Counted from the whole stretch's first letter, positions 16,144 to 26,958 are shown. The stretch is 63,853 nucleotides of DNA, filler included, from Octopus bimaculoides (GCF_001194135.2; 8 parts of 6 records of this genome joined end to end with filler, not necessarily neighbours in it); one strand, 5' to 3'. The notes: a model not told the origin generated them from the letters alone. Made by a program: numbers and translations.

Positions 16144-16716
16144 TACATTATTGCACAAATACGTTGAATTTTATCTGTGTCGTTTGCTTGCAATTTTTGC
16201 TCCTGACTTCATAACTACTAGAGGCTCACCTACAGTATCACTTAAAATTATTAGCATTCATTTCTCTTGTTATGTATATGTATATATCTATATCTATATG
16301 TTTATATATACGTTTATATATNNNNNNNNNNNNNNNNNNNNNNNNNNNNNNNNNNNNNNNNNNNNTTAATTAATTAANNNNNNNNNNNNNNNNNNNNNNN
16401 NNNNNNNNNNNNNNNNNNNNNTATATATATATATATATATATATAATGGAAGTAAAAAAGGCACGCATAAAATTAAATCGTTAAATTATAAAACTTTTCA
16501 AAAGAATAAAAACAAAAATAACAAACATGAGACTAATAAATGATGGTCGGCAAAAAACATAGTGCAGCAGGCTTTCATCAATTACTCCAAAAGGTGACGA
16601 CTGCATCTTCGCTCCCCAATAAGTTCATCAGGTTCAACGGTGTTGTTGGATCGATATCTTCAATCACCAAACACTTCAACACTCAACGCAGAGTGAAATA
16701 ATTTTATATATAAATT

Positions 16717-16747
<31 letters not shown>

Positions 16748-16821
16748 CTGTATATACACCATGTAATTGCGAGTGTATATATTTAAATATATGTGTATGC
16801 CTGAGATGTGATGTTTAAATT

Positions 16822-18423
16822 TCATTTTCTTGCTTTCTTTGGTTGGGAAAGTTCTGCGATTGCATTCGTAGTCTCTGTCGTAGCAAACTGCAGGACTGGA
16901 GAGCTTAGGGGCATTGGAAGGGTTATTATTTGTTGGGTTCCATTGTTTTGATCCGTAGATTGGAGGGCAGCTGATTGCTGAAAGTTTAGAAGAGAACCGT
17001 CTGGCAGTGTAGGAGCGGCATACACGACTCCTTGAGGGGTCTGATACATCACAAATCCAGGGGTCATAGTTGTGGCCGATGTCGTACCATGCTGACCCGT
17101 GGCAGGGACAGACATAAGGTTTACAGTCTGGTTTTGGGTGTTATTTGTACTTGTCGAAACCGACGTCGCTGATGTCGTGGATGCTGAAGCTGTTAGTTGC
17201 AAGGCTTCTCCACTTACTGAAGTCACCGTCGTTGGGCTACTCATGTTTGTATTATTATTGGTGTTGCCAGATATATTGGCTATGGACACTACTTGTGTAT
17301 TAGGTAGTCGGTACACAGGTGCGGCTGCCGCCTGGGCGATTTGTTGGGTCCCCTGTTGAAAGGGGATTGTAAATTGCGTCCCTGGCTGCAAAATAGCCGT
17401 CAGACTAGGCGATACCTGCATGGAGATATTAGTGTTCGTGTTGCCATTGCTGGTGGTAGAATGGGTTGAGGCGGTGGTAGCATGAGCAGCAGTAACAGAA
17501 ACCGGCTTTGTCGTGGTTGCAGAGCTAGATGGTATCGTTGATAGAGTGGAAGGCACCAGCGCGGCCATGGGTAACTGATTCTGACCGACACCAGTTGAAG
17601 TAACGTACAGTGACGTTGATTGCGGTGGCGGAGGCGACGACGTCATGGCGTTACCTATAAGTTGAGATCTGTTTAGCACCTGGTCCCCTGGCATCTGGGC
17701 CAAAAGGGGTTTCAAATCCGCTTTATTTTCATCCTCCACTGAATACGTTAGTTCAGTTTCTTCGAATCCGGTAGGGTTCATACGTTGTTGATGGGAAGGA
17801 CCATCGGCAGAAGTGTCCGGGGAATTTAAACAGGTTTGGATAAGGGCTTTTCCGCTGTCACTCGTTATCATGGGTTGAAGCTTGCGAGTGGCGAATGTAT
17901 ATACATGTCCCGTTTCACTCGCTACAAGCAGCATTACCTGAGTACCAGTTAATGTAGATAATTCATAAGCTTTTTTCATGATCCCAGTTTTTCTTTTACT
18001 GAACGTTGTATACCTGCGGAGTTTATTTTGAATAAATTCCATTTTGATTTTGACACGACCTTTTGTCTTTTTGCCAGGTTTTAGTCCATCGGGCGGTCGT
18101 CTAACCTGATGTTGGCCTTGGTTTTGTTGATGTGACTGTGATTGTAAATGTAAATCGTTTCCAATACAATCACTTTCTGAATCTGAATCCGAATTATCGT
18201 CACCAAGTTCGTTATTGGAATGTGTTGAAGCCATGGTTGTCTGCATCCTGCTGCCTGGAGCCAAACTCAAGTGTTTCGAGTCAGCCCCACTCGGAGCGGT
18301 CGATGCAATTCCCGAAGTTTTGAATACGCTTTGATCCACTAGTAGTCTACTACCATTTGTTATGTTATCTGAATGGACGTACTGCGATACTGTTAACGTT
18401 TCACAGTGATTAGAATTCTGCAT
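16822..18423 (-). CDS. SRF: Serum response factor (SRF-type MADS-box transcription factor), single-exon ORF, 533 aa from the first ATG
   Basis: KPGKKTKGRVKIKMEFIQNKLRRYTTFSKRKTGIMKKAYELSTLTGTQVMLLVASETGHVYTFATRKLQPMITSDSGKALIQTCLNSPD (about 18081-17815) is nearly identical to the animal SRF MADS+SAM core; downstream QRMNPTGFEETELTYSV and GFVMYQTPQGVVYAAPTLPDGSLLNF match SRF motifs; uninterrupted frame to TGA. The track's start at 18429 is a TTG; the ATG is at 18423. Confidence 0.97.
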   Translation of the reverse strand: MQNSNHCETLTVSQYVHSDNITNGSRLLVDQSVFKTSGIASTAPSGADSKHLSLAPGSRMQTTMASTHSNNELGDDNSDSDSESDCIGNDLHLQSQSHQQNQGQHQVRRPPDGLKPGKKTKGRVKIKMEFIQNKLRRYTTFSKRKTGIMKKAYELSTLTGTQVMLLVASETGHVYTFATRKLQPMITSDSGKALIQTCLNSPDTSADGPSHQQRMNPTGFEETELTYSVEDENKADLKPLLAQMPGDQVLNRSQLIGNAMTSSPPPPQSTSLYVTSTGVGQNQLPMAALVPSTLSTIPSSSATTTKPVSVTAAHATTASTHSTTSNGNTNTNISMQVSPSLTAILQPGTQFTIPFQQGTQQIAQAAAAPVYRLPNTQVVSIANISGNTNNNTNMSSPTTVTSVSGEALQLTASASTTSATSVSTSTNNTQNQTVNLMSVPATGQHGTTSATTMTPGFVMYQTPQGVVYAAPTLPDGSLLNFQQSAALQSTDQNNGTQQIITLPMPLSSPVLQFATTETTNAIAELSQPKKARK

Positions 18424-18539
18424 TGTCAACGAGAAAGGAATAATTTACCAAATTAAACGAACTGCCGTCAATAGGAAAGCCATAACGGGAAAGTGAGGAA
18501 CAAATTACAGCCAAGCATTCAATAACTACACAAATATAT

Positions 18540-18574
18540 ACTTCCGCCAAAAAAGTCCATTACGATTCGCCATT
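18540..18574 (-). promoter_or_regulatory. ETS-type (CGGAAGT) and YY1-type (AATGGCG) motifs in the probable SRF 5' leader/proximal promoter
   Basis: acttccg 18540-18546 and cgccatt 18568-18574 on the plus strand. Confidence 0.35.
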
Positions 18575-18778
18575 GTCAAATATAAAGAAAACTAATAAAT
18601 AACTACGACACAAGCACTAATGATTGTTTAAGGGAAACTACTATATTGTCAGGCATTCGCAATATAACTGTCTGCAAAATAACTGTGTATTTGCGTGTAT
18701 GCAATGAAACTAGCGCGGAAGAATATGTGAGGTTGGCCGTGTTGTGTTACCCGTATCAAGTTTGGAAGTACGGGGTTC

Positions 18779-18840
18779 CCATATATGGATGGCACGGCCA
18801 AATATGGCGCACGTGGAATGTGTGTGTGATTGACCCGCCC
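18779..18840 (-). promoter_or_regulatory. SRF promoter: tandem CArG boxes, E-box, GC box
   Basis: CCATATATGG 18779-18788, CCAAATATGG 18798-18807, CACGTG 18810-18815, CCCGCCC 18834-18840, in a CpG-retaining island upstream of the ATG. Confidence 0.85.
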
Positions 18841-20139
18841 CTCGCTTCACTCATTCTCTCTCTCTTCGTTTAATATTCTTCTTATCACTAACTCTTTCCC
18901 CTCCTTCTCTCCACTCGTCTATCTTTTATTCTTTCTCTAAAAAAAAAAAAAAAACCTTTCTCCTTTTACCCTCTCTTATTCTCTATGCAACAGTAACATA
19001 CCGCTCCCACTTCGACTATTTGGTGGTTCTGACGATAAGCTTTCAATAAACTATGGTAGCCACTAAATGTCACTTTTCTTAATTAAAGTTTGTCCATTCA
19101 TAATTTTTCTTAATATTAAAATAATTCATGAAAATAGAGATAAGAGTATGTTAACAAAAAATATCTTCGAACCATACGTTTAATTTTTTGATTAAAAAAA
19201 AAATACCTGTTATACGCAGAACTACCCAACTTTACCCAATTTTTTGTTCACTATCAAAATAATTCATTGTGCGTCTAATTATAATTTTTCTTTCATCAAA
19301 GTAAGTTTCAAATTAAAGAATAGTAATTGTAGATTACTCCTTATAAAAAACACAAGAGATAAATCTCTAATTATTAAATATTCATTTTATTTTAAACTTA
19401 TCAACATAAAAGCAGAATCGAAATTCTGTTGCAGGCGAGTAAGTGCTTCTGTAATAAAGAAAGGGCAACTGTCGCATGTGGCGTGCTTTTTTTACTACTA
19501 ACTTTCACAAAAGCGTGTTTGTTCGTGTGAGAGGCTCTGACAACTCGAGGTTTTATTTAGAACGTCTTCTCTCTCTCACTGCATCTCTCTATCTTTCTCT
19601 TTATATCCTCTCTCTCTTTCTACCTTATATTCTCTTACTGTTTTCTCTCACTTTTTAACACTCATTTTTCTCTGTCTATCTATTTATCTGTCTGTCCATC
19701 TTTCTGTCAGTCAGTCTGTCTGTCTATGCCTTTCTCTATCTTTTCTGCCTTTCTCTCTCTCTCTCTAAATTAATTTTTCTTTCCTCATCTAATCTTCTAT
19801 CTTTTCTTCTCTTTTCTTCCATTATGCTTCACTTTTTCTCGTTCTCTTTATAACTTTTAATCTCTCATATTTTCATTTATGTCGTTATTTCTCATATTCT
19901 TTTAATCTCTTCTTATACTTTCCTTCTATTTTACTCATTTCTCTCCCTCTACATACCTCCTCCTCCGTGTTTCTTGTATCCACCCACTCTTCTCTGTTTT
20001 CCCTCTTCTTTTTCTCACATTCCTATTTTCGTTTTCATTTCTGTTTCTCTTGATCTTTCTGTCTCGCCTTTTTCTTTTCTCCATTATATCTCCTTACTCC
20101 ACTTTCTCCATCTTTCACCCCCTCCCCCTCCTCCTCTTC

Positions 20140-20236
20140 TTCTTCTTCTTCTTCTTCTTCTTCTTCTTCTTCTTCTTCTTCTTCTTCTTCTTCTTCTTCT
20201 TCTTCTTCTTCTTCTTCTTCTTCTTCTTCTTCTTCT
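20140..20236. repeat. (TTC)n microsatellite
   Basis: Directly visible. Confidence 0.95.
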
Positions 20237-20271
20237 TTATTCACTCATATTCTTACCATTATCTTTTTTTC

Positions 20272-20460
20272 TGCGTTTCAGTCATTAGACTGCGGCCATA
20301 CTGGGGCACTGCCTTGAAGAGTTTTAGTCGAAGGAATTGAGGCCAGTACTTAGTTATTCTTAAAATCTGGTACTGTTGGTCTTTTATGTCGAACAGGTAA
20401 ATTACAAGGATGTTAACAAACCAACTCTGGTTGTCAAACGGTGATGGGTGACAAACACAC
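20272..20460 (-). mobile_element. SINE family A 3' half
   Basis: tttcagtcattagactgcggccatactggggcac...ggttgtcaaacggtg. Confidence 0.8.
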
Positions 20461-20527
20461 GCACATACATATATATACATACACTCATACATACATACAT
20501 ACATACATACATACATACATACATACA

Positions 20528-21145
20528 TGGACCAACAACCAGATTACTACCTCCCACTTTGAAGGGTATGTATTTGCAATCCAGGAACAGGAAATATCAA
20601 CCAAATACCCAATGCACAAAAGGGACAGAGATGCAGAAAAAGCAGTAAAATGTGACAACCGATGCAGACTTTGTGGAGTTTACACTGAAGATATCACCCA
20701 CATCAGAAGCAGTTGTCCGAAAATGTCATCACGGTATTATCTGCAGTTACTCTATCCAGATTACAAGTTCAGGCTTATACCTGTAATTATTGGGACCCTG
20801 GGATATGTAACACACTGCTTAAATGCCAATCTTCAGAAATTAGGCTTCCGCAAAGCCAGAAAGGAGAAAGCTAATTCAAAGACTACAGATTCAATCCATC
20901 GCTAGAATTGTAAAAATCGGTAAAACTTTCCAGAAGTTTGTCATTTAAGTATATATGAGCATGTCTAGATCTGCAAGCATATGCATGAGAATACATACAT
21001 AAAACAAACATACAAATCAGTAAATATATATACATACATACATGCATGCATGCATACCTTGTTGTTGCTGTTGAAATTCCAATGAAAGACCGTTGGAGCT
21101 AGGTTAGAAACTGGTTCTTTCTCAAGTGGCAAGAAATCTTGAAAT
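20528..21145 (+). mobile_element. 5'-truncated, internally deleted R4-clade (RLE-type) non-LTR element: CCHC knuckle, nuclease tail, 3' UTR
   Basis: EGYVFAIQEQEISTKY...CRLCGVYTEDITHIRSSCPKMSSRYY...IPVIIGTLGYV; flanked by (CATA)n on both sides. Confidence 0.8.
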
Positions 21146-21649
21146 AAAACTGAATAATGATATGTATGTACATACAGACAAACATGCATACATGTATACA
21201 TCCATACATATATGCATGCATGCATGCATCCATCCATACATACATACAATATTAAGCTTAGAAGCTATGCACATTAACAGAATTTCCGACGAAAGTAGAA
21301 TAAAACAAACCGCACATATATACATATACATAAAAACATGAACAGAAATCTTCGAGCGAAGAATTTTGAACGAATCTGAATAAATCACAAGTTTGCTTCT
21401 AACCCACAGACATTATATAAAGAGACGAGGAAGGAAAAAATTACTGTTAAGAGATCCCCCCCCCCCCAGAAAATCTTGTATTATTCTGGCTGAAAATCTG
21501 GAACGAAAAGAGAAATCTCAAGCTCAGTGCATCGTGACTAAATGCAGTAAAGAGAGAGAGAGTAGTGTACTAGCATAAGACAGCAAAACATATGCAGTTG
21601 ACTCGGAAGCTTTCACCATAGCTGTAGGCAAACTGTATAATGGAAGGCA

Positions 21650-22340
21650 TCGGGAAGGGCCCTAATAGTTGGATATTGGTATAACAAGCTGACATTTTAC
21701 AGGAAACCACTAATAAGTTTATTCAAAAGTACTATGGAAGGTCAGATTGACATACGAAATTGATTTGCTATAGCACGGACGAATCTCGTGGCCAAGAACG
21801 AAACCACTGAGTTGCCTGAAAAGTATAGGCTCGTTGCTTGCCTAAACATTATGTACAATCTATCTCAACCAATTCCTCCAGGATCATTGCGAGTCCAGCA
21901 ACATAGCGACTGATGAGCAGGTTTGAAGTTGGAAAAAAAAACAAAAAAAAAAAACATCGTCGGAGCCTTACAACAGTATGGGCTTGATTGGAGGAAAGCA
22001 TTTGGCTCTTTCCCCCACTCATGGCTACTGAAGTGTCTCCATTTGGTAAAAGAATCTGCTATCTTAATTACTGCCATTGAGAGGCTAACAAAGACCTGGA
22101 AAACAATTCTCGCTCTCAGAACGGAGAATGGAACGGTCATCTCAAATGCCATAAACACTTCAAAGGGCATATTTCAAAGAGAGAGTCTCTGTAAGTTTGT
22201 CCATGTTGGCGTTAGATTCATTGTCATTCCTGCTACAAAAATCAAATGGCTACATCCTAGGGTCTGCAACTGTTAGAAATATTAATGTAACCCATAATTT
22301 TGTGGATGACCTCAAGATTTGTGTTTAAAATGTTAACAAT

Positions 22341-22374
<34 letters not shown>

Positions 22375-23220
22375 AAAAGAAAAAACCCAGCTGGAATTAA
22401 TAATATTTTCAGCCAACATAGGAATGGAATTTGGCCAAAAGAAATGTTTATATTTGATTGTTGAACGGGGAAAATCTATTCCCCGGACCCCAAACTTGTG
22501 CAGCAATGCTCTCACTATCTCTCCTGTCCCACACAAAGAATGCTACGAGTACCTAGGCATTGATGAAAATATATTATACGAAGGTACTTTGAATAAAGAT
22601 AGAGTGACCCAAGAATATTATAGCAGACTTAGAAAAATAAGGCAGCCGGAACTCTTCTCTTGCGGTACTCCCACAATGCATTCGCAGTACCAGTGCTGAT
22701 TCCAACATTTGAGACATTTTTGTGGTCTATAGAAGAAATCCACTCCATAGACATTAAAACCCGCAAGATTCTGACTTCAACTGAAATCTCCACAGAAAAA
22801 GTGATATCGACAGGCTCTACCTTCGAAGAGATAGAGGAGGTAGAGGCTTGAAATTAGTAGGCAGCCTCAGATAGCACTTGCTAATCAACAACAGCAAAAA
22901 TAATTTCATTAACTTAGTGCTGAAAAGTGAAGGAAACAATATTCTAAGTGTCGGAAGCGAACTCTTCAAGAAGCATTCTCTTCCTGATGACCTCCCATAC
23001 AATCCCAAAACAGTTGCATTAACATACTTCAAAAAAGACCTGGAAGTGAAACGCTCAGTATACCAAAACGAAAAAAAAAAAAAAAAGACCATGTAGGGGT
23101 ATGTTTCCTGAAGGCTTGAAGAAGACAATAACATTGAGATGAAGTGAAGTCTCTCTTGGACTCGTGACTAATCCAAAACAATCTAAAAACAGGAGATTGC
23201 TACTAAATACCTAATAAACA
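21650..23220 (+). mobile_element. Degenerate R4-clade reverse transcriptase region
   Basis: KYRLVACLNIMY, LDWRKAFGSFPHSWL, KGIFQRESL, HNFVDDLKI, GMEFGQKKC, YEYLGI, FHRKSDIDRLYLRRDRGGRGL across frameshifts. Confidence 0.85.
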
Positions 23221-23222
23221 AA

Positions 23223-23328
23223 GCTATAGTAGAAGACACTTGCCCAAGGTACCACGCAGTGGGATTGAACCCGGAACCATGTGATTGGTAAGCAAGCTAC
23301 TTACCACACAGCCACAACTGCACCTACA
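23223..23328 (-). mobile_element. SINE family A head
   Basis: agtagaagacacttgcccaaggtaccacgcagtgggattgaacccggaacc...taccacacagcc. Confidence 0.85.
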
Positions 23329-24084
23329 ATTACATATATGTTTANNNNNNNNNNNNNNNNNNNNNNNNNNNNNNNNNNNNNNNNNNNNNNNNNNNNNNNN
23401 NNNNNNNNNNNNNNNNNNNNNNNNNNNNNNNNNNNNNNNNNNNNNNNNNNNNNNNNNNNNNNNNNNNNNNNNNNNNNNNNNNNNNNNNNNNNNNNNNNNN
23501 NNNNNNNNNNNNNNNNNNNNNNNNNNNNNNNNNNNNNNNNNNNNNNNNNNNNNNNNNNNNNNNNNNNNNNNNNNNNNNNNNNNNNNNNNNNNNNNNNNNN
23601 NNNNNNNNNNNNNNNNNNNNNNNNNNNNNNNNNNNNNNNNNNNNNNNNNNNNNNNNNNNNNNNNNNNNNNNNNNNNNNNNNNNNNNNNNNNNNNNNNNNN
23701 NNNNNNNNNNNNNNNNNNNNNNNNNNNNNNNNNNNNNNNNNNNNNNNNNNNNNNNNNNNNNNNNNNNNNNNNNNNNNNNNNNNNNNNNNNNNNNNNNNNN
23801 NNNNNNNNNNNNNNNNNNNNNNNNNNNNNTATATATATATATATATATATGATATGTGTGTGCGTGTGTGTTAACTCTGATGTTTACCTTAATAAGTTCA
23901 TCTACGGGTGCAGGCTATGAACCAAAATAAAATGCCAAGTAGTGTTTGTTTATTGCATCAAGCACATGTCCTAAAATCAATAAATATCCGTTGAGTTTTA
24001 CGATTAGAAACGACAAGAATAGAGTGAGCGAGTGATTTCATTACATCAATTTCCAATTATTTCGTTTGAATTCAAAATGGTGAA

Positions 24085-24960
24085 TTTGTATGGGCAAGGA
24101 GCTCATTTTGCAATCACGTGGTTTCGGCTTCATATTGTAAAAATTTATATATTTATTAGGTGTAGGCACAGTTGTATTGTTAGGGAGCTTGATTTGCAAT
24201 GACGTAGTTTCGAGTTCACGTCGTTTCGGGTTCATGCCGTTTCCAGTTCACGTGGTTCATAATTTAAAACTTTATATATTTATTAGGCGTAGGCAAAACT
24301 GTACGGCTAAGGGGTTCGTTTTGCAATCACGTGGTTTCGGGTACAAATTTTAAAACTCTGTATAGTTATTAAGCGTAGGTACAGCTGTATGGTTAAGGTG
24401 TTCCTTTTGCAATGACGTGGTTTCGGGTTCACGTGGCTTCTGGTTCACGCGGTTTCGGGGTCACGTGGTTTCGGGGTCACGTGGTTTCGGGTTCATATTG
24501 TAAAATTTTATATTTCTTAGGTGTAGGCACTACTGTATGGTTAAGGAGTTCGTTTTGCAATCACATGGTTTGGGGTTTCAGGTTCATCTTTCAAAATTTT
24601 ATACATTTATTAGTTGTACGGTTAAGGAGCTCATTTTGCAATCAATCATATGGTTTCAGGTCCATATGTAAAAACTTGATGTATTTATTAGGAGTGGTTA
24701 TAACTGCATGGTCAAGGCACTACTGTATGGTTAAGGGGTTCGTTTTACAATCACGTGGTTTTGGGTTCAGGTGGTTTCGGGTTCATATTTTAAAACTTTA
24801 TATATTTATTAGACGTGGGCACAGCTGTATGGATAAAGAGCTCATTTTGCAATCACGTGGTTTCGAATTCAGTGAAACTGCGCTGCAATTTGGGTGAGTA
24901 TCTTTTACTATAACCAATGCCTTGGGAAGGAATTTGGTTGACGAAAACCGTGTGGAAGAC
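24085..24960 (+). repeat. Tandem array of ~8 SINE-head units (75-150 bp) ending in a SINE body
   Basis: Unit ggtgtaggcacagctgtatggttaaggagctcattttgcaatcacgtggtttcgggttca + AT-rich spacer, with a nested ~15-16 bp cacgtggtttcggg(g/t)t repeat; the last unit continues into family A body sequence. Confidence 0.9.
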
Positions 24961-25539
24961 TGTCTATGCGAGTTTGTGTCTGCATTGACAACAGAGTTTC
25001 AGTTCGTTTACACATGCGTAACTTAGCGGTTAATAAGGAACTTAGCATGAGAAGACTGAGTGTCAGTATGTTTTATCTATGACCATAAGTCCGACAAAAT
25101 ATATTTTATTCTGCCTGAAGGCTTGTGAAGAGCAATCTTCAGGCGAAACAAGATACAGTATGTAAGACTCATGATTATGGATTAAATGTGTGTGTGTGTA
25201 TATATACATACATACATGCATAGATACATAAGAACATACACACCATCTTCGAACATCTTTCCTTTAACATCTTAAATGTAGGATTTCTTCCTTGAAGACG
25301 GAGGCTCGACTCATCCTATGATGGAATCAATCTACAAACACTATTATGGACCATCGAGTCCCCAGAAACAGCTGTTGGATTTGCAATACTGTTCTTCAAC
25401 CCCTTTAATTCTGTATATCATTTCTAATCTAATCTGTGTAAGGTGGATCTTTTTATATGTAAACATATAAACATACATACATATGTAGTGAAACTAACAC
25501 TTCTATCGCCATTATATACAAACAAACCATCTTCCCCAC

Positions 25540-26566
25540 TGTTATAAATATATTCAAGTTCGGGCGTAGTAGAGAGCAGCCTGCTGTATCCATCACATGA
25601 CTGACTATTCTTTGCGCGGGTAAATTATCTCGTACCGTTCCTGCCAGAACGCAAACTGACCAATCACAGCCCCTAATAAGGTCACGTGATAGTGTTTTTC
25701 TAATGCTTCTCTGTAGCCTACCTTCAGCTATAAATAGACTAAATTATACCCGGCAAATTGGTCGCGCCTCAAATCTCCTTTGAGATCTGGTGTTGACCAC
25801 ACACGCGTAACACAGCAGCAACCAGTTTCCAGCGACGACATCAACACCATCGTACAACTACGAACTACAAGCATCGCCACCGATGTCGCCAGCAGCAACA
25901 CGACTCTGCGTACTACCAGCATCGCCGCCAGCGTCAACATGACTCTACACGTACACTAGCTATCAACAGCTAACCAAACTACCGCAGAACTTCTGTCTTC
26001 GATCCTGTTTGTGTGATTCGCCTCACCACGAAATAACAGCCAAGAACCCAGCCTGCGAAGAACATCTGTATTCAAGAACCCGGCTTGGCATAGTAGCCCT
26101 AACATCACAACTAATGATCGCTCTGCCCCACACGCCTTAACTTCTTATATACAGACACTTACCACTGTGTACTCTAAGAACTGGTATCTTAAATTCTTAT
26201 ACGCGTTACTGACTCTTTTCTATACTATGTATCTCTTGCATACNNNNNNNNNNNNNNNNNNNNNNNNNNNNNNNNNNNNNNNNNNNNNNNNNNNNNNNNN
26301 NNNNNNNNNNNNNNNNNNNNNNNNNNNNNNNNNNNNNNNNNNNNNNNNNNCCAGTCTTATATTGTGTTTTATTATGTCGCATTCACACTCACACACAGAC
26401 ATACATTTTAATACTACAATAAATCTTACTGTTATTCATCTCATACGGTTGTGTTCCTATCGTCTTCCTTACTGGCATTTACGAATTGTCTATGTTATCG
26501 AAGTATAACATATAACTATATCATTTGATATATTTTTGTGTTCGACCGTGTGACGCGTTTAATAAA
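25540..26566 (+). mobile_element. Probable solo LTR (or orphan Pol II transcription unit); right end lost in gaps
   Basis: Begins TGTT, CpG-rich, promoter boxes at 25660-25736, short internal repeats, no long ATG ORF, AATAAA at 26561-26566. No TSD confirmed. Confidence 0.55.
25660..25736 (+). promoter_or_regulatory. CCAAT box, CArG box, E-box, TATA box
   Basis: gaCCAATca 25660-25664, CCTAATAAGG 25672-25681, gtCACGTGa 25683-25688, TATAAATA 25729-25736. Confidence 0.7.
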
Positions 26567-26958
26567 NNNNNNNNNNGACACTTACCACTGTGTACTCTAA
26601 GAACTGGTATCTTAAATTCTTATACGCGTTACTGACTCTTTTCTATACTATGTATCTCTTGCATACACATACATGTATTACTCACACACACACTTTTGTT
26701 TACATGACGACCAGTCTTATATTGTGTTTTATTATGTCGCATTCACACTCACACACAGACATACATTTTAATACTACAATAAATCTTACTGTTATTCATC
26801 TCATACGGTTGTGTTCCTATCGTCTTCCTTACTGGCATTTACGAATTGTCTATGTTATNNNNNNNNNNNNNNNNNNNNNNNNNNNNNNNNNNNNNNNNNN
26901 NNTTAATTAATTAANNNNNNNNNNNNNNNNNNNNNNNNNNNNNNNNNNNNNNNNNNNN

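What the first reader, a model, noticed from the sequence alone, without database searches (positions are those of the whole stretch)
16822..18423. Intronless SRF gene that still has an SRF-type promoter
The whole 533-aa frame, including the MADS box, has no intron, whereas vertebrate SRF and Drosophila blistered are multi-exon. I see no stops, poly(A) scar or TSD, and the tandem-CArG promoter sits directly upstream. This fits in-situ intron loss (cDNA recombination) at the ancestral locus better than a dispersed retrocopy. An intronless form would allow faster immediate-early induction (inference).
Basis: partly seen in the sequence, partly recalled or inferred. Interest (0 to 1): 0.75.

Follow-up and report, generated by a model that had tools for sequence, protein, structure and literature searches.

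The report
Intronless octopus SRF gene, ancestral promoter
This is the octopus's only detectable copy of the transcription factor SRF: seven ancient introns have been cleanly removed from its coding sequence, in all coleoid cephalopods sampled, while the old self-regulating promoter remains, making it a tidy but not revolutionary case of intron loss in place.

Summary
On the minus strand, 18423..16822 is one uninterrupted 533-codon frame encoding a full-length SRF. It has a Pfam SRF-TF domain, is about 90% identical to the human SRF core, and has a conserved C-terminal domain. Two consensus CArG boxes 19 bp apart lie 365 and 384 bp upstream of the ATG.

The coding sequence is also a single exon in Octopus sinensis, Argonauta hians and a cuttlefish. 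Limpet, abalone and scallop each have 8 coding exons, with 7 introns at shared positions and phases. The first intron, inside the MADS box, sits at the identical position in a sea urchin. Introns are therefore ancestral, and all seven were lost before octopods and decapodiforms split. This is not specific to octopus.

The promoter is homologous to the scallop's (42/52 identical, z about 21), and the 5' leader motifs are shared with gastropods. dN/dS is about 0.09-0.11. No second cephalopod SRF appeared in a protein search made without the MADS box.

This favours intron loss at the ancestral locus, probably through a cDNA, over a dispersed retrocopy. Synteny, Nautilus, the transcription start site and the "faster induction" idea remain untested.

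The parts
16822..18423 (-). Single-exon SRF coding sequence, 533 codons plus a TGA stop. The MADS/SAM core is about aa 113-206.
   Evidence: It is 98% identical to O. sinensis SRF-like P0001.
17970..17971 (-). Site of lost ancestral intron 1 (phase 0, K151|A152, inside the MADS box). The other six lost introns map to about 17722/17721, 17382/17381, 17277/17276, about 17160, 16941/16940 and 16897/16896.
   Evidence: Exact splice maps of Patella, Pecten, Haliotis and Diadema, projected through a protein alignment.
18798..18807 (-). Distal consensus CArG box, CCATATTTGG (-384).
   Evidence: Identical in O. sinensis, Argonauta, cuttlefish and Pecten.
18779..18788 (-). Proximal consensus CArG box, CCATATATGG (-365), 19 bp from the distal box.
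   Evidence: Conserved in all molluscs examined.
18713..18853 (-). Conserved promoter block. It holds a GC box (18841-18834), an E-box (18815-18810), the two CArG boxes, an Ets-like ACTTCC (18769-18764), a CArG-like CCAAACTTGA (18765-18756) and ATTCTTCCGCGC (18724-18713).
   Evidence: Octopus versus cuttlefish is 90% identical over 120 bp (18848-18730), higher than the coding sequence at 72%. Octopus-Argonauta homology starts at 18853. The motifs are located. Pecten shares 42/52 bases.
18424..18712 (-). Presumed 5' UTR (about 290 nt if transcription starts near 18713-18740). It contains a conserved 12-codon uORF (18483-18445) and the leader motif AAATTATTCCTTT (18446-18434).
   Evidence: The start-site position is inferred from the conservation pattern and from vertebrate SRF, where two CArG boxes lie within 60 nt of the start (PMC7203814).
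16422..16821 (-). Start of the 3' UTR. It contains a (TA)n repeat and no A-rich scar. The piece ends before any recognisable transcript end.

Best explanation
This is the octopus orthologue of serum response factor, and apparently its only copy. SRF is a MADS-box transcription factor that binds CArG boxes as a dimer.

Its coding sequence is a single exon because all seven introns present in the ancestral molluscan (and bilaterian) SRF gene were precisely removed. This happened before octopods and decapodiforms diverged.

The removal took place at the ancestral locus. The non-transcribed promoter, with its double CArG box, and the 5' leader are still homologous to those of intron-containing molluscan SRF genes.

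The most likely mechanism is replacement of the exon-intron body by a reverse-transcribed, fully spliced SRF cDNA through homologous recombination or gene conversion. The crossovers would lie in exon 1 or the 5' UTR and in the last exon or 3' UTR (inferred).

Functionally, the gene is presumably still driven by SRF itself through the two CArG boxes, as in vertebrates (inferred from motif conservation). It now yields a short primary transcript whose coding region needs no splicing, so it can make no coding splice isoforms.
For: Shown:
- The 533-codon frame is uninterrupted, with an SRF-TF domain and an SRF core about 90% identical to human.
- The coding sequence is a single exon in O. sinensis, Argonauta hians and Acanthosepion pharaonis, plus two independent Logan genomic contigs.
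- Patella, Pecten and Haliotis each have 8 coding exons over about 14 kb, with 7 introns of phases 0,0,1,1,1,1,0 at homologous positions.
- Diadema has 9 coding exons. Its intron 1 is identical in position and phase. Its introns near octopus aa 234, 494 and 509 match in phase and lie within 1-4 residues.
- dN/dS is 0.085 against O. sinensis and 0.106 against Argonauta.
- The promoter block is more conserved between octopus and cuttlefish (90%) than the coding sequence is.
- Octopus and Pecten promoters are 42/52 identical, z=20.9. Haliotis gives z=6.9 and Patella z=6.7 (alignments).
- The 5' leader uATG and the AAATTATTCCTT motif are shared with Haliotis and Patella.
- A search without the MADS box finds only one SRF cluster per cephalopod lineage.
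- Squid-type contigs that look like RNA-seq transcripts carry the same unspliced coding sequence.
- Human SRF has seven exons, with two CArG boxes within 60 nt upstream of the transcription start (PMC7203814).
Against: - Losing every intron at once is also the hallmark of retroposition.
- Synteny with the ancestral neighbourhood was not tested.
- The transcription start is not mapped. That the CArG boxes lie outside the transcript is inferred from the conservation pattern and the vertebrate precedent.
- The long stem branch allows several successive losses rather than one event.
- Nautilus was not available.
- The copy-number check used predicted proteins, not a genome-wide tblastn.
- Introns within the UTRs are not excluded.
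Confidence: 0.7

Rival explanations
1. It is a retrogene. A processed SRF mRNA was inserted elsewhere in the genome, became functional, and the intron-containing parent was later lost. The CArG promoter was either carried along on an aberrant transcript started upstream, or was rebuilt by convergence.
For: All seven introns are gone and only one copy exists. Retroelement debris is present nearby in the window. Synteny was not tested.
Against: A 52-bp block with the same order, spacing and flanks as the scallop promoter (42/52 identical, z=20.9) is hard to obtain by convergence. It sits at a similar distance from the ATG. Ordinary retrocopies lack sequence from upstream of the transcription start. 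No poly(A) remnant is present in any lineage, though this is weak evidence given the age.
Confidence: 0.13
2. The loss happened in place but stepwise. Several independent events on the long cephalopod stem lineage (partial cDNA conversions or genomic deletions) removed the introns a few at a time.
For: The interval between the split from other molluscs and the coleoid crown is very long. No intermediate taxon such as Nautilus was examined. Nothing in the sequence records the number of events.
Against: Seven precise, in-frame removals with none left over are most economically explained by one full-length cDNA. All sampled coleoids are already at zero introns.
Confidence: 0.2
3. It is an artefact. 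cDNA contamination or a mis-assembly gives a false intronless locus.
For: The window has N gaps and a probable assembly duplication further upstream.
Against: The same single-exon structure, with genomic flanks and promoter, is present in four species' independent assemblies and in two Logan contigs of about 6 kb. The gaps are more than 4.9 kb away from the gene.
Confidence: 0.01

Closest known systems
Vertebrate SRF gene (human SRF, 6p21.1)
   Same: The MADS/SAM core is about 90% identical, and acidic Ser-rich N-terminal and C-terminal activation-domain motifs are shared. In vertebrates the promoter carries two CArG boxes close to the transcription start, through which SRF regulates its own gene (PMC7203814, citing earlier promoter work). 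The octopus also has a GC box next to its CArG boxes.
   Different: The human gene has seven exons and produces splice isoforms (my knowledge). The octopus coding sequence is one exon. I could not align the vertebrate promoter here because no sequence was available.
SRF genes of other molluscs (Pecten maximus, Patella vulgata, Haliotis rubra)
   Same: They are orthologous proteins. The promoter module is homologous (CArG-CCGTG-N4/5-CArG-GGGAACCCC...). The 5' leader motifs and the uATG near -60 are homologous.
   Different: They have 8 coding exons spread over about 14 kb. Several non-cephalopod relatives are annotated with multiple isoforms. The cephalopods have no coding introns and no isoform labels.
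Reverse-transcriptase-mediated intron loss (recombination of a genomic gene with its own cDNA; a general model known from yeast and animals)
   Same: The removal is precise and in frame, adjacent introns were lost together, and the flanking non-transcribed DNA is retained.
   Different: Textbook cases usually lose a few introns, biased towards the 3' end. Here every coding intron is gone, including one at codon 151, which implies a full-length cDNA.
Functional retrogenes (processed gene copies)
   Same: They are intronless copies of a multi-exon gene and can remain under purifying selection.
   Different: Retrogenes normally sit at a new site, lack the parental promoter and coexist with the parent. 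Here the promoter is the parental one and no parent copy is seen.

Membership tests
SRF subfamily of MADS-box transcription factors | MADS box (Pfam SRF-TF) | tested here: met
   PF00319 matches aa 130-177, E=7.8e-21, 73.7 bits against a cut-off of 26.
SRF subfamily of MADS-box transcription factors | SRF-type core (MADS plus SAM extension) rather than the MEF2 or MCM1 type | tested here: met
   Human SRF core chains score 3e-51, against MCM1 at 2e-30 and MEF2 at about 1e-8.
SRF subfamily of MADS-box transcription factors | Full-length collinearity with SRF orthologues, including the C-terminal activation region | tested here: met
   It aligns end to end with mollusc and sea urchin SRF. Shared motifs include MYQTPQGVVYA, QQIIT.P.P and the terminal KKARK.
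SRF subfamily of MADS-box transcription factors | Binds CArG boxes as a dimer and recruits TCF/MRTF cofactors | not testable with these tools
   Inferred only from the near-identity of the DNA-binding core.
In-situ intron loss through a cDNA | Introns are ancestral and their sites are now seamless and in frame | tested here: met
   Seven shared intron positions in three molluscs, polarised by the sea urchin. All seven are continuous in the window ORF.
In-situ intron loss through a cDNA | Non-transcribed flank (promoter) remains orthologous to that of intron-containing relatives | tested here: met
   Octopus-Pecten 42/52 identical, z=20.9. Haliotis and Patella z about 7. The caveat is that the transcription start is not mapped.
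In-situ intron loss through a cDNA | Conserved gene neighbourhood | not tested
   No neighbour lies within 10 kb in the cephalopod loci. Pecten has a Peptidase_M28 neighbour and Diadema has BBS1. The look-ups were exhausted before their octopus orthologues could be placed.
Dispersed processed retrogene | Lacks all parental introns | tested here: met
Dispersed processed retrogene | Lacks the parental promoter and sits at a new site | tested here: not met
   The promoter is homologous to the parental type. The site itself was not tested.
Dispersed processed retrogene | Poly(A) remnant and target-site duplications | tested here: inconclusive
   None is seen within 4 kb downstream in three cephalopod lineages, but such marks would not survive this long.
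Dispersed processed retrogene | An intron-containing parent copy elsewhere in the genome | tested here: inconclusive
   No second cephalopod SRF appears among predicted proteins. A genome-wide tblastn was not possible.
SRF-autoregulated (SRE-type) promoter | Two consensus CArG boxes close to the transcription start | tested here: inconclusive
   The boxes are present and deeply conserved. The distance to the start is unknown, because the transcript contigs reach only -150.
SRF-autoregulated (SRE-type) promoter | SRF binding and stimulus-dependent induction | not testable with these tools
   This needs EMSA or ChIP and reporter or time-course experiments.

The most novel reading that the evidence does not exclude
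Removing all the introns may have been adaptive in a lineage whose genes carry very long introns. It would turn SRF into a short, splice-free unit that can be induced quickly, and it would abolish splice-isoform regulation. The gene would still sit behind a promoter-plus-uORF control module unchanged since before cephalopods, gastropods and bivalves diverged, and possibly older, since the sea urchin also has paired CArG boxes at about -400. That would make the SRF promoter one of the few cis-regulatory sequences traceable across phyla.
Probability: 0.15. Interest if true: 0.6.

Novelty: new member of a known kind. Interest (0 to 1): 0.35.

Why it matters
SRF is a central regulator of immediate-early and cytoskeletal genes, and in vertebrates its splice isoforms modulate its activity. 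A lineage in which the gene has been rebuilt without introns but kept behind its original promoter offers two things.

It is a clean natural example of cDNA-mediated gene replacement. It is also a natural experiment on whether introns, through transcription delay and isoforms, matter for SRF regulation.

As a by-product, the promoter and leader comparison gives an experimentally usable, deeply conserved control module: double CArG, flanking motifs and a uORF. Functional work on cephalopod or other molluscan SRF could start from it.

The gene itself is already annotated in public genomes as a single-exon SRF-like gene. What is new is the evolutionary reading, not the existence of the gene.

Tried and rejected
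- **Failed look-ups.** Encoding contigs for Ostrea, Liolophura (chiton) and Lingula SRF were not on record under those isoform sequences. There is therefore no chiton or brachiopod gene structure, and a sea urchin was used to polarise the introns instead.
- **Synteny.** A 10-kb flank of the Pecten locus gave only the last exon (about 55 aa) of a glutaminyl-cyclase-like gene. Synteny was abandoned.
- **Cuttlefish Logan contigs L004 and L005.** I hoped these were transcripts. They contain the promoter and 1.5-1.8 kb of upstream DNA, so they are genomic.
- **Squid-type contigs L009-L011.** These look like transcripts, but their 5' ends (-43 to -150) are too short to locate the transcription start.
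- **O. vulgaris P0005 (430 aa).** It looked like a possible alternative structure. It is a chimeric gene model: the SRF N-terminus joined to unrelated sequence.
- **Literature.** Searches for an intronless SRF, cephalopod intron loss, and octopus plus SRF found nothing on this gene. The survey of bilaterian-conserved regulatory DNA (PMC10735318) does not discuss the SRF promoter in its main text.
- **Sea urchin promoter.** It does not align significantly with the octopus promoter as a block (z=2.2). Only the paired CArG arrangement is shared.
- **Nautilus.** No Nautilus sequence could be identified among the hits.

Full report
**What is there**

In the piece 16422-26858, the longest frame lies on the minus strand. 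It runs from the ATG at 18423 to the TGA at 16824-16822: 533 codons with no internal stop. An in-frame stop lies eight codons upstream of the ATG.

The product carries the Pfam SRF-TF domain at aa 130-177 (E=7.8e-21). Residues 113-206 match the crystallised human SRF core (1k6o, 1srs) at 3e-51, roughly 90% identical. This is far better than MCM1 (2e-30) or the MEF2 proteins (about 1e-8).

The protein is 98% identical to "serum response factor-like" of Octopus sinensis and 82% identical to that of Argonauta hians. It is about 59% identical to SRF of the cuttlefish Acanthosepion pharaonis. It aligns end to end with mollusc and sea urchin SRF, including the C-terminal motifs.

The exact protein is on record on a 94.6-Mb NCBI contig. 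The window is therefore from an octopus close to O. sinensis, probably O. bimaculoides (inference).

**Is it really intronless, and is that derived?**

In the genome records the coding sequence is one block in three species. It is 1602 bp in O. sinensis, 1641 bp in Argonauta and 1620 bp in the cuttlefish. For the cuttlefish this also holds on two independent Logan contigs of about 6 kb.

In contrast, the limpet Patella vulgata, the scallop Pecten maximus and the abalone Haliotis rubra spread the coding sequence over about 14 kb. I solved every splice junction exactly, with GT-AG borders and translations identical to the annotated proteins. All three have 8 coding exons and 7 introns of phases 0,0,1,1,1,1,0 at homologous positions.

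Gastropods and bivalves might form a clade that excludes cephalopods, so I polarised the character with a deuterostome. The sea urchin Diadema antillarum has 9 coding exons over 35 kb. Its first intron is at exactly the same place and phase, TGIMKK|AYELST, inside the MADS box. Three of its other introns match in phase and lie within 1-4 residues, next to octopus residues 234, 494 and 509.

Human SRF has seven exons (PMC7203814). Introns are thus ancestral.

Projected on the window, the seven lost introns would lie at these positions:
- 17971|17970
- 17722|17721
- 17382|17381
- 17277|17276
- about 17160
- 16941|16940
- 16897|16896

The frame runs seamlessly through all of them. The loss is shared by the octopods and decapodiforms sampled, so it predates their split. 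It is not an octopus peculiarity. Nautilus could not be examined.

**Is the gene functional and single?**

Nei-Gojobori dN/dS is 0.085 against O. sinensis (dS 0.12) and 0.106 against Argonauta (dS 0.69). Against the cuttlefish, synonymous sites are saturated while dN is only 0.22.

I ran a second protein search with the MADS box cut out, so that it would not be swamped by every animal SRF. It returned 23 proteins in all. The cephalopod ones were a single cluster per lineage: the Octopus cluster, Argonauta, two sepiids and one squid-like sequence. The sixth was the O. vulgaris model P0005, which the alignment shows to be a chimeric prediction.

The squid-like protein sits on three contigs of 1.9-2.7 kb from three runs of one series. 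Two of them end in A14-A17, so they look like assembled transcripts and indicate expression.

The copy-number check rests on predicted proteins, not on a whole-genome tblastn.

**The promoter**

On the gene's strand there are two consensus CArG boxes. CCATATTTGG lies at 18807-18798 and CCATATATGG at 18788-18779, which is -384 and -365 from the ATG and 19 bp apart. Around them, in order, are:
- a GC box, 18841-18834
- an E-box, 18815-18810
- the two CArG boxes
- an Ets-like ACTTCC, 18769-18764
- a degenerate third CArG-like box, 18765-18756
- the motif ATTCTTCCGCGC, 18724-18713

Shuffling predicts about 0.7 CArG matches in this piece and three are seen. Conservation is much stronger evidence than that count:
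- The same pair, with the same spacing, is at -384/-365 in O. sinensis, -387/-368 in Argonauta and -373/-354 in the cuttlefish.
- It is also at -259/-240 in the scallop.
- Abalone and limpet keep the proximal box and a slightly degenerate distal one.
- Between octopus and cuttlefish the promoter block 18848-18730 is 90% identical over 120 bp, against 72% for the coding sequence.
- Octopus-Argonauta similarity starts abruptly at 18853.
- Octopus and scallop share an ungapped 52-bp stretch with 42 identities, GCCATATTTGGCCGTG....CCATAT.TGGGAACCCC......CCAAAC.TG. It scores z=20.9 against shuffled queries. Abalone gives z=6.9 and limpet z=6.7.
- The sea urchin has two CArG boxes at -420 and -388, but no block alignment that beats chance.

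In vertebrates two CArG boxes lie within 60 nt upstream of the SRF transcription start and mediate regulation by SRF itself (PMC7203814). By analogy, and from the drop in conservation after 18713, I place the octopus start near 18713-18740. This is an inference. The transcript contigs reach only -150.

The 5' leader is also homologous across molluscs. There is a uATG near -60 in the context CC(C/G)TT(T)ATGGC. The motif AAATTATTCCTT lies about 25 nt before the main ATG in octopus, Argonauta and cuttlefish (as AAATTCTTCCTT in the squid-type transcript), and also in abalone and limpet.

**Interpretation**

An mRNA-derived copy inserted elsewhere would bring the leader but not the DNA upstream of the transcription start. 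Here the upstream control block is recognisably the same sequence as in an intron-containing relative. It has the same internal order and spacing and lies at a similar distance from the ATG.

The most economical reading is that the exon-intron body of the resident gene was replaced by a fully spliced cDNA through homologous recombination or gene conversion. That would leave the promoter in place and probably the distal 3' end too.

I put about 0.7 on loss at the ancestral locus. Within that, a single full-length cDNA event is more likely than several successive ones, but the long stem branch means stepwise loss cannot be excluded.

The main rival is a retrogene that carried or rebuilt the promoter and outlived its parent. 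It remains possible at perhaps 0.13, because synteny was not tested. No neighbouring gene lies within 10 kb in any cephalopod locus.

The absence of a poly(A) scar or target-site duplications says little at this age. An assembly artefact is excluded by four independent assemblies.

**Consequences**

These are inferred, not shown.
- The primary transcript is a few kb instead of 14 kb or more.
- The coding region needs no splicing.
- Coding splice isoforms are impossible. Several non-cephalopod relatives are annotated with multiple isoforms.

**Comparison with what is known, and novelty**

The protein is an ordinary SRF, and the gene is already annotated as such in public octopus genomes. cDNA-mediated intron loss and functional intronless gene copies are established phenomena.

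I found no paper that describes the intronless state of cephalopod SRF or the conservation of its promoter. I therefore rate it a new member of a known kind. It has moderate interest, mainly as a clean example and because of the deeply conserved promoter and uORF module.

Noticed in passing
window 18483-18445 (minus strand), and 18446-18434: A 12-codon upstream ORF (MAFLLTAVRLIW*) lies in the SRF leader. Its start context (CCCGTTATGGC) and its end (ATTTGGTAA) are conserved in Argonauta, the cuttlefish and a squid-type transcript. A uATG at -54 to -63 also exists in abalone, limpet and scallop. The motif AAATTATTCCTT just before the main ATG is shared with abalone and limpet. This suggests conserved translational control, or a DNA element in the leader.
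   Followed up: partly
window 18713-18853 (minus strand); L012/L007 about -260 to -175; L008; L006: The SRF promoter module is conserved across cephalopods, a bivalve and gastropods. It comprises two CArG boxes 19 bp apart, a CCGTG spacer, GGGAACCCC, a third CArG-like box and ATTCTTCCGC. The sea urchin also has paired CArG boxes near -400. A survey of bilaterian-conserved regulatory DNA (PMC10735318) does not mention this promoter in its main text.
   Followed up: partly
window 20135-20237: A perfect (TCT)34 microsatellite, (GAA)n on the gene's strand, lies about 1.7 kb upstream of the SRF ATG. It sits inside a long purine-rich, low-complexity tract (about 19560-20290).
   Followed up: no
window 20441-20905, 21923-22699, 22343-22385: These look like decayed pieces of non-LTR retroelements. 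There is a weak zf-RVT match (E=0.003, below the Pfam cut-off). Two ORFs at 21923-22699 look reverse-transcriptase-like by eye but gave no Pfam match, with an A43 tract on the plus strand between them. Part of this region is shared with O. sinensis at about 86% identity.
   Followed up: partly
window 23345-23829, 26244-26350, 26567-26576, and 26167 versus 26590: There are three runs of N (assembly gaps). A segment starting at 26167 is repeated at 26590 across the gaps. This is probably an assembly duplication rather than biology.
   Followed up: no
window 24202-24495: There are tandem arrays of a 16-bp unit (ACGTGGTTTCGGGTTC) and an 86-bp unit, each unit carrying a CACGTG. Their origin is unknown.
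   Followed up: no
P0005 (Octopus vulgaris, 430 aa): The public O. vulgaris 'SRF-like' protein is a chimeric gene model. Its first 260 or so residues are SRF and the rest is unrelated, transposon-like sequence.
   Followed up: partly
L009 1857+167; L010 and L011 3' ends: In the squid-type transcript contigs an A14-A17 run lies 167 nt after the stop codon. Two contigs end there and one reads through it. It could be a genomic A-run used for internal priming, or an alternative poly(A) site. No equivalent exists in the cuttlefish or the octopods.
   Followed up: no
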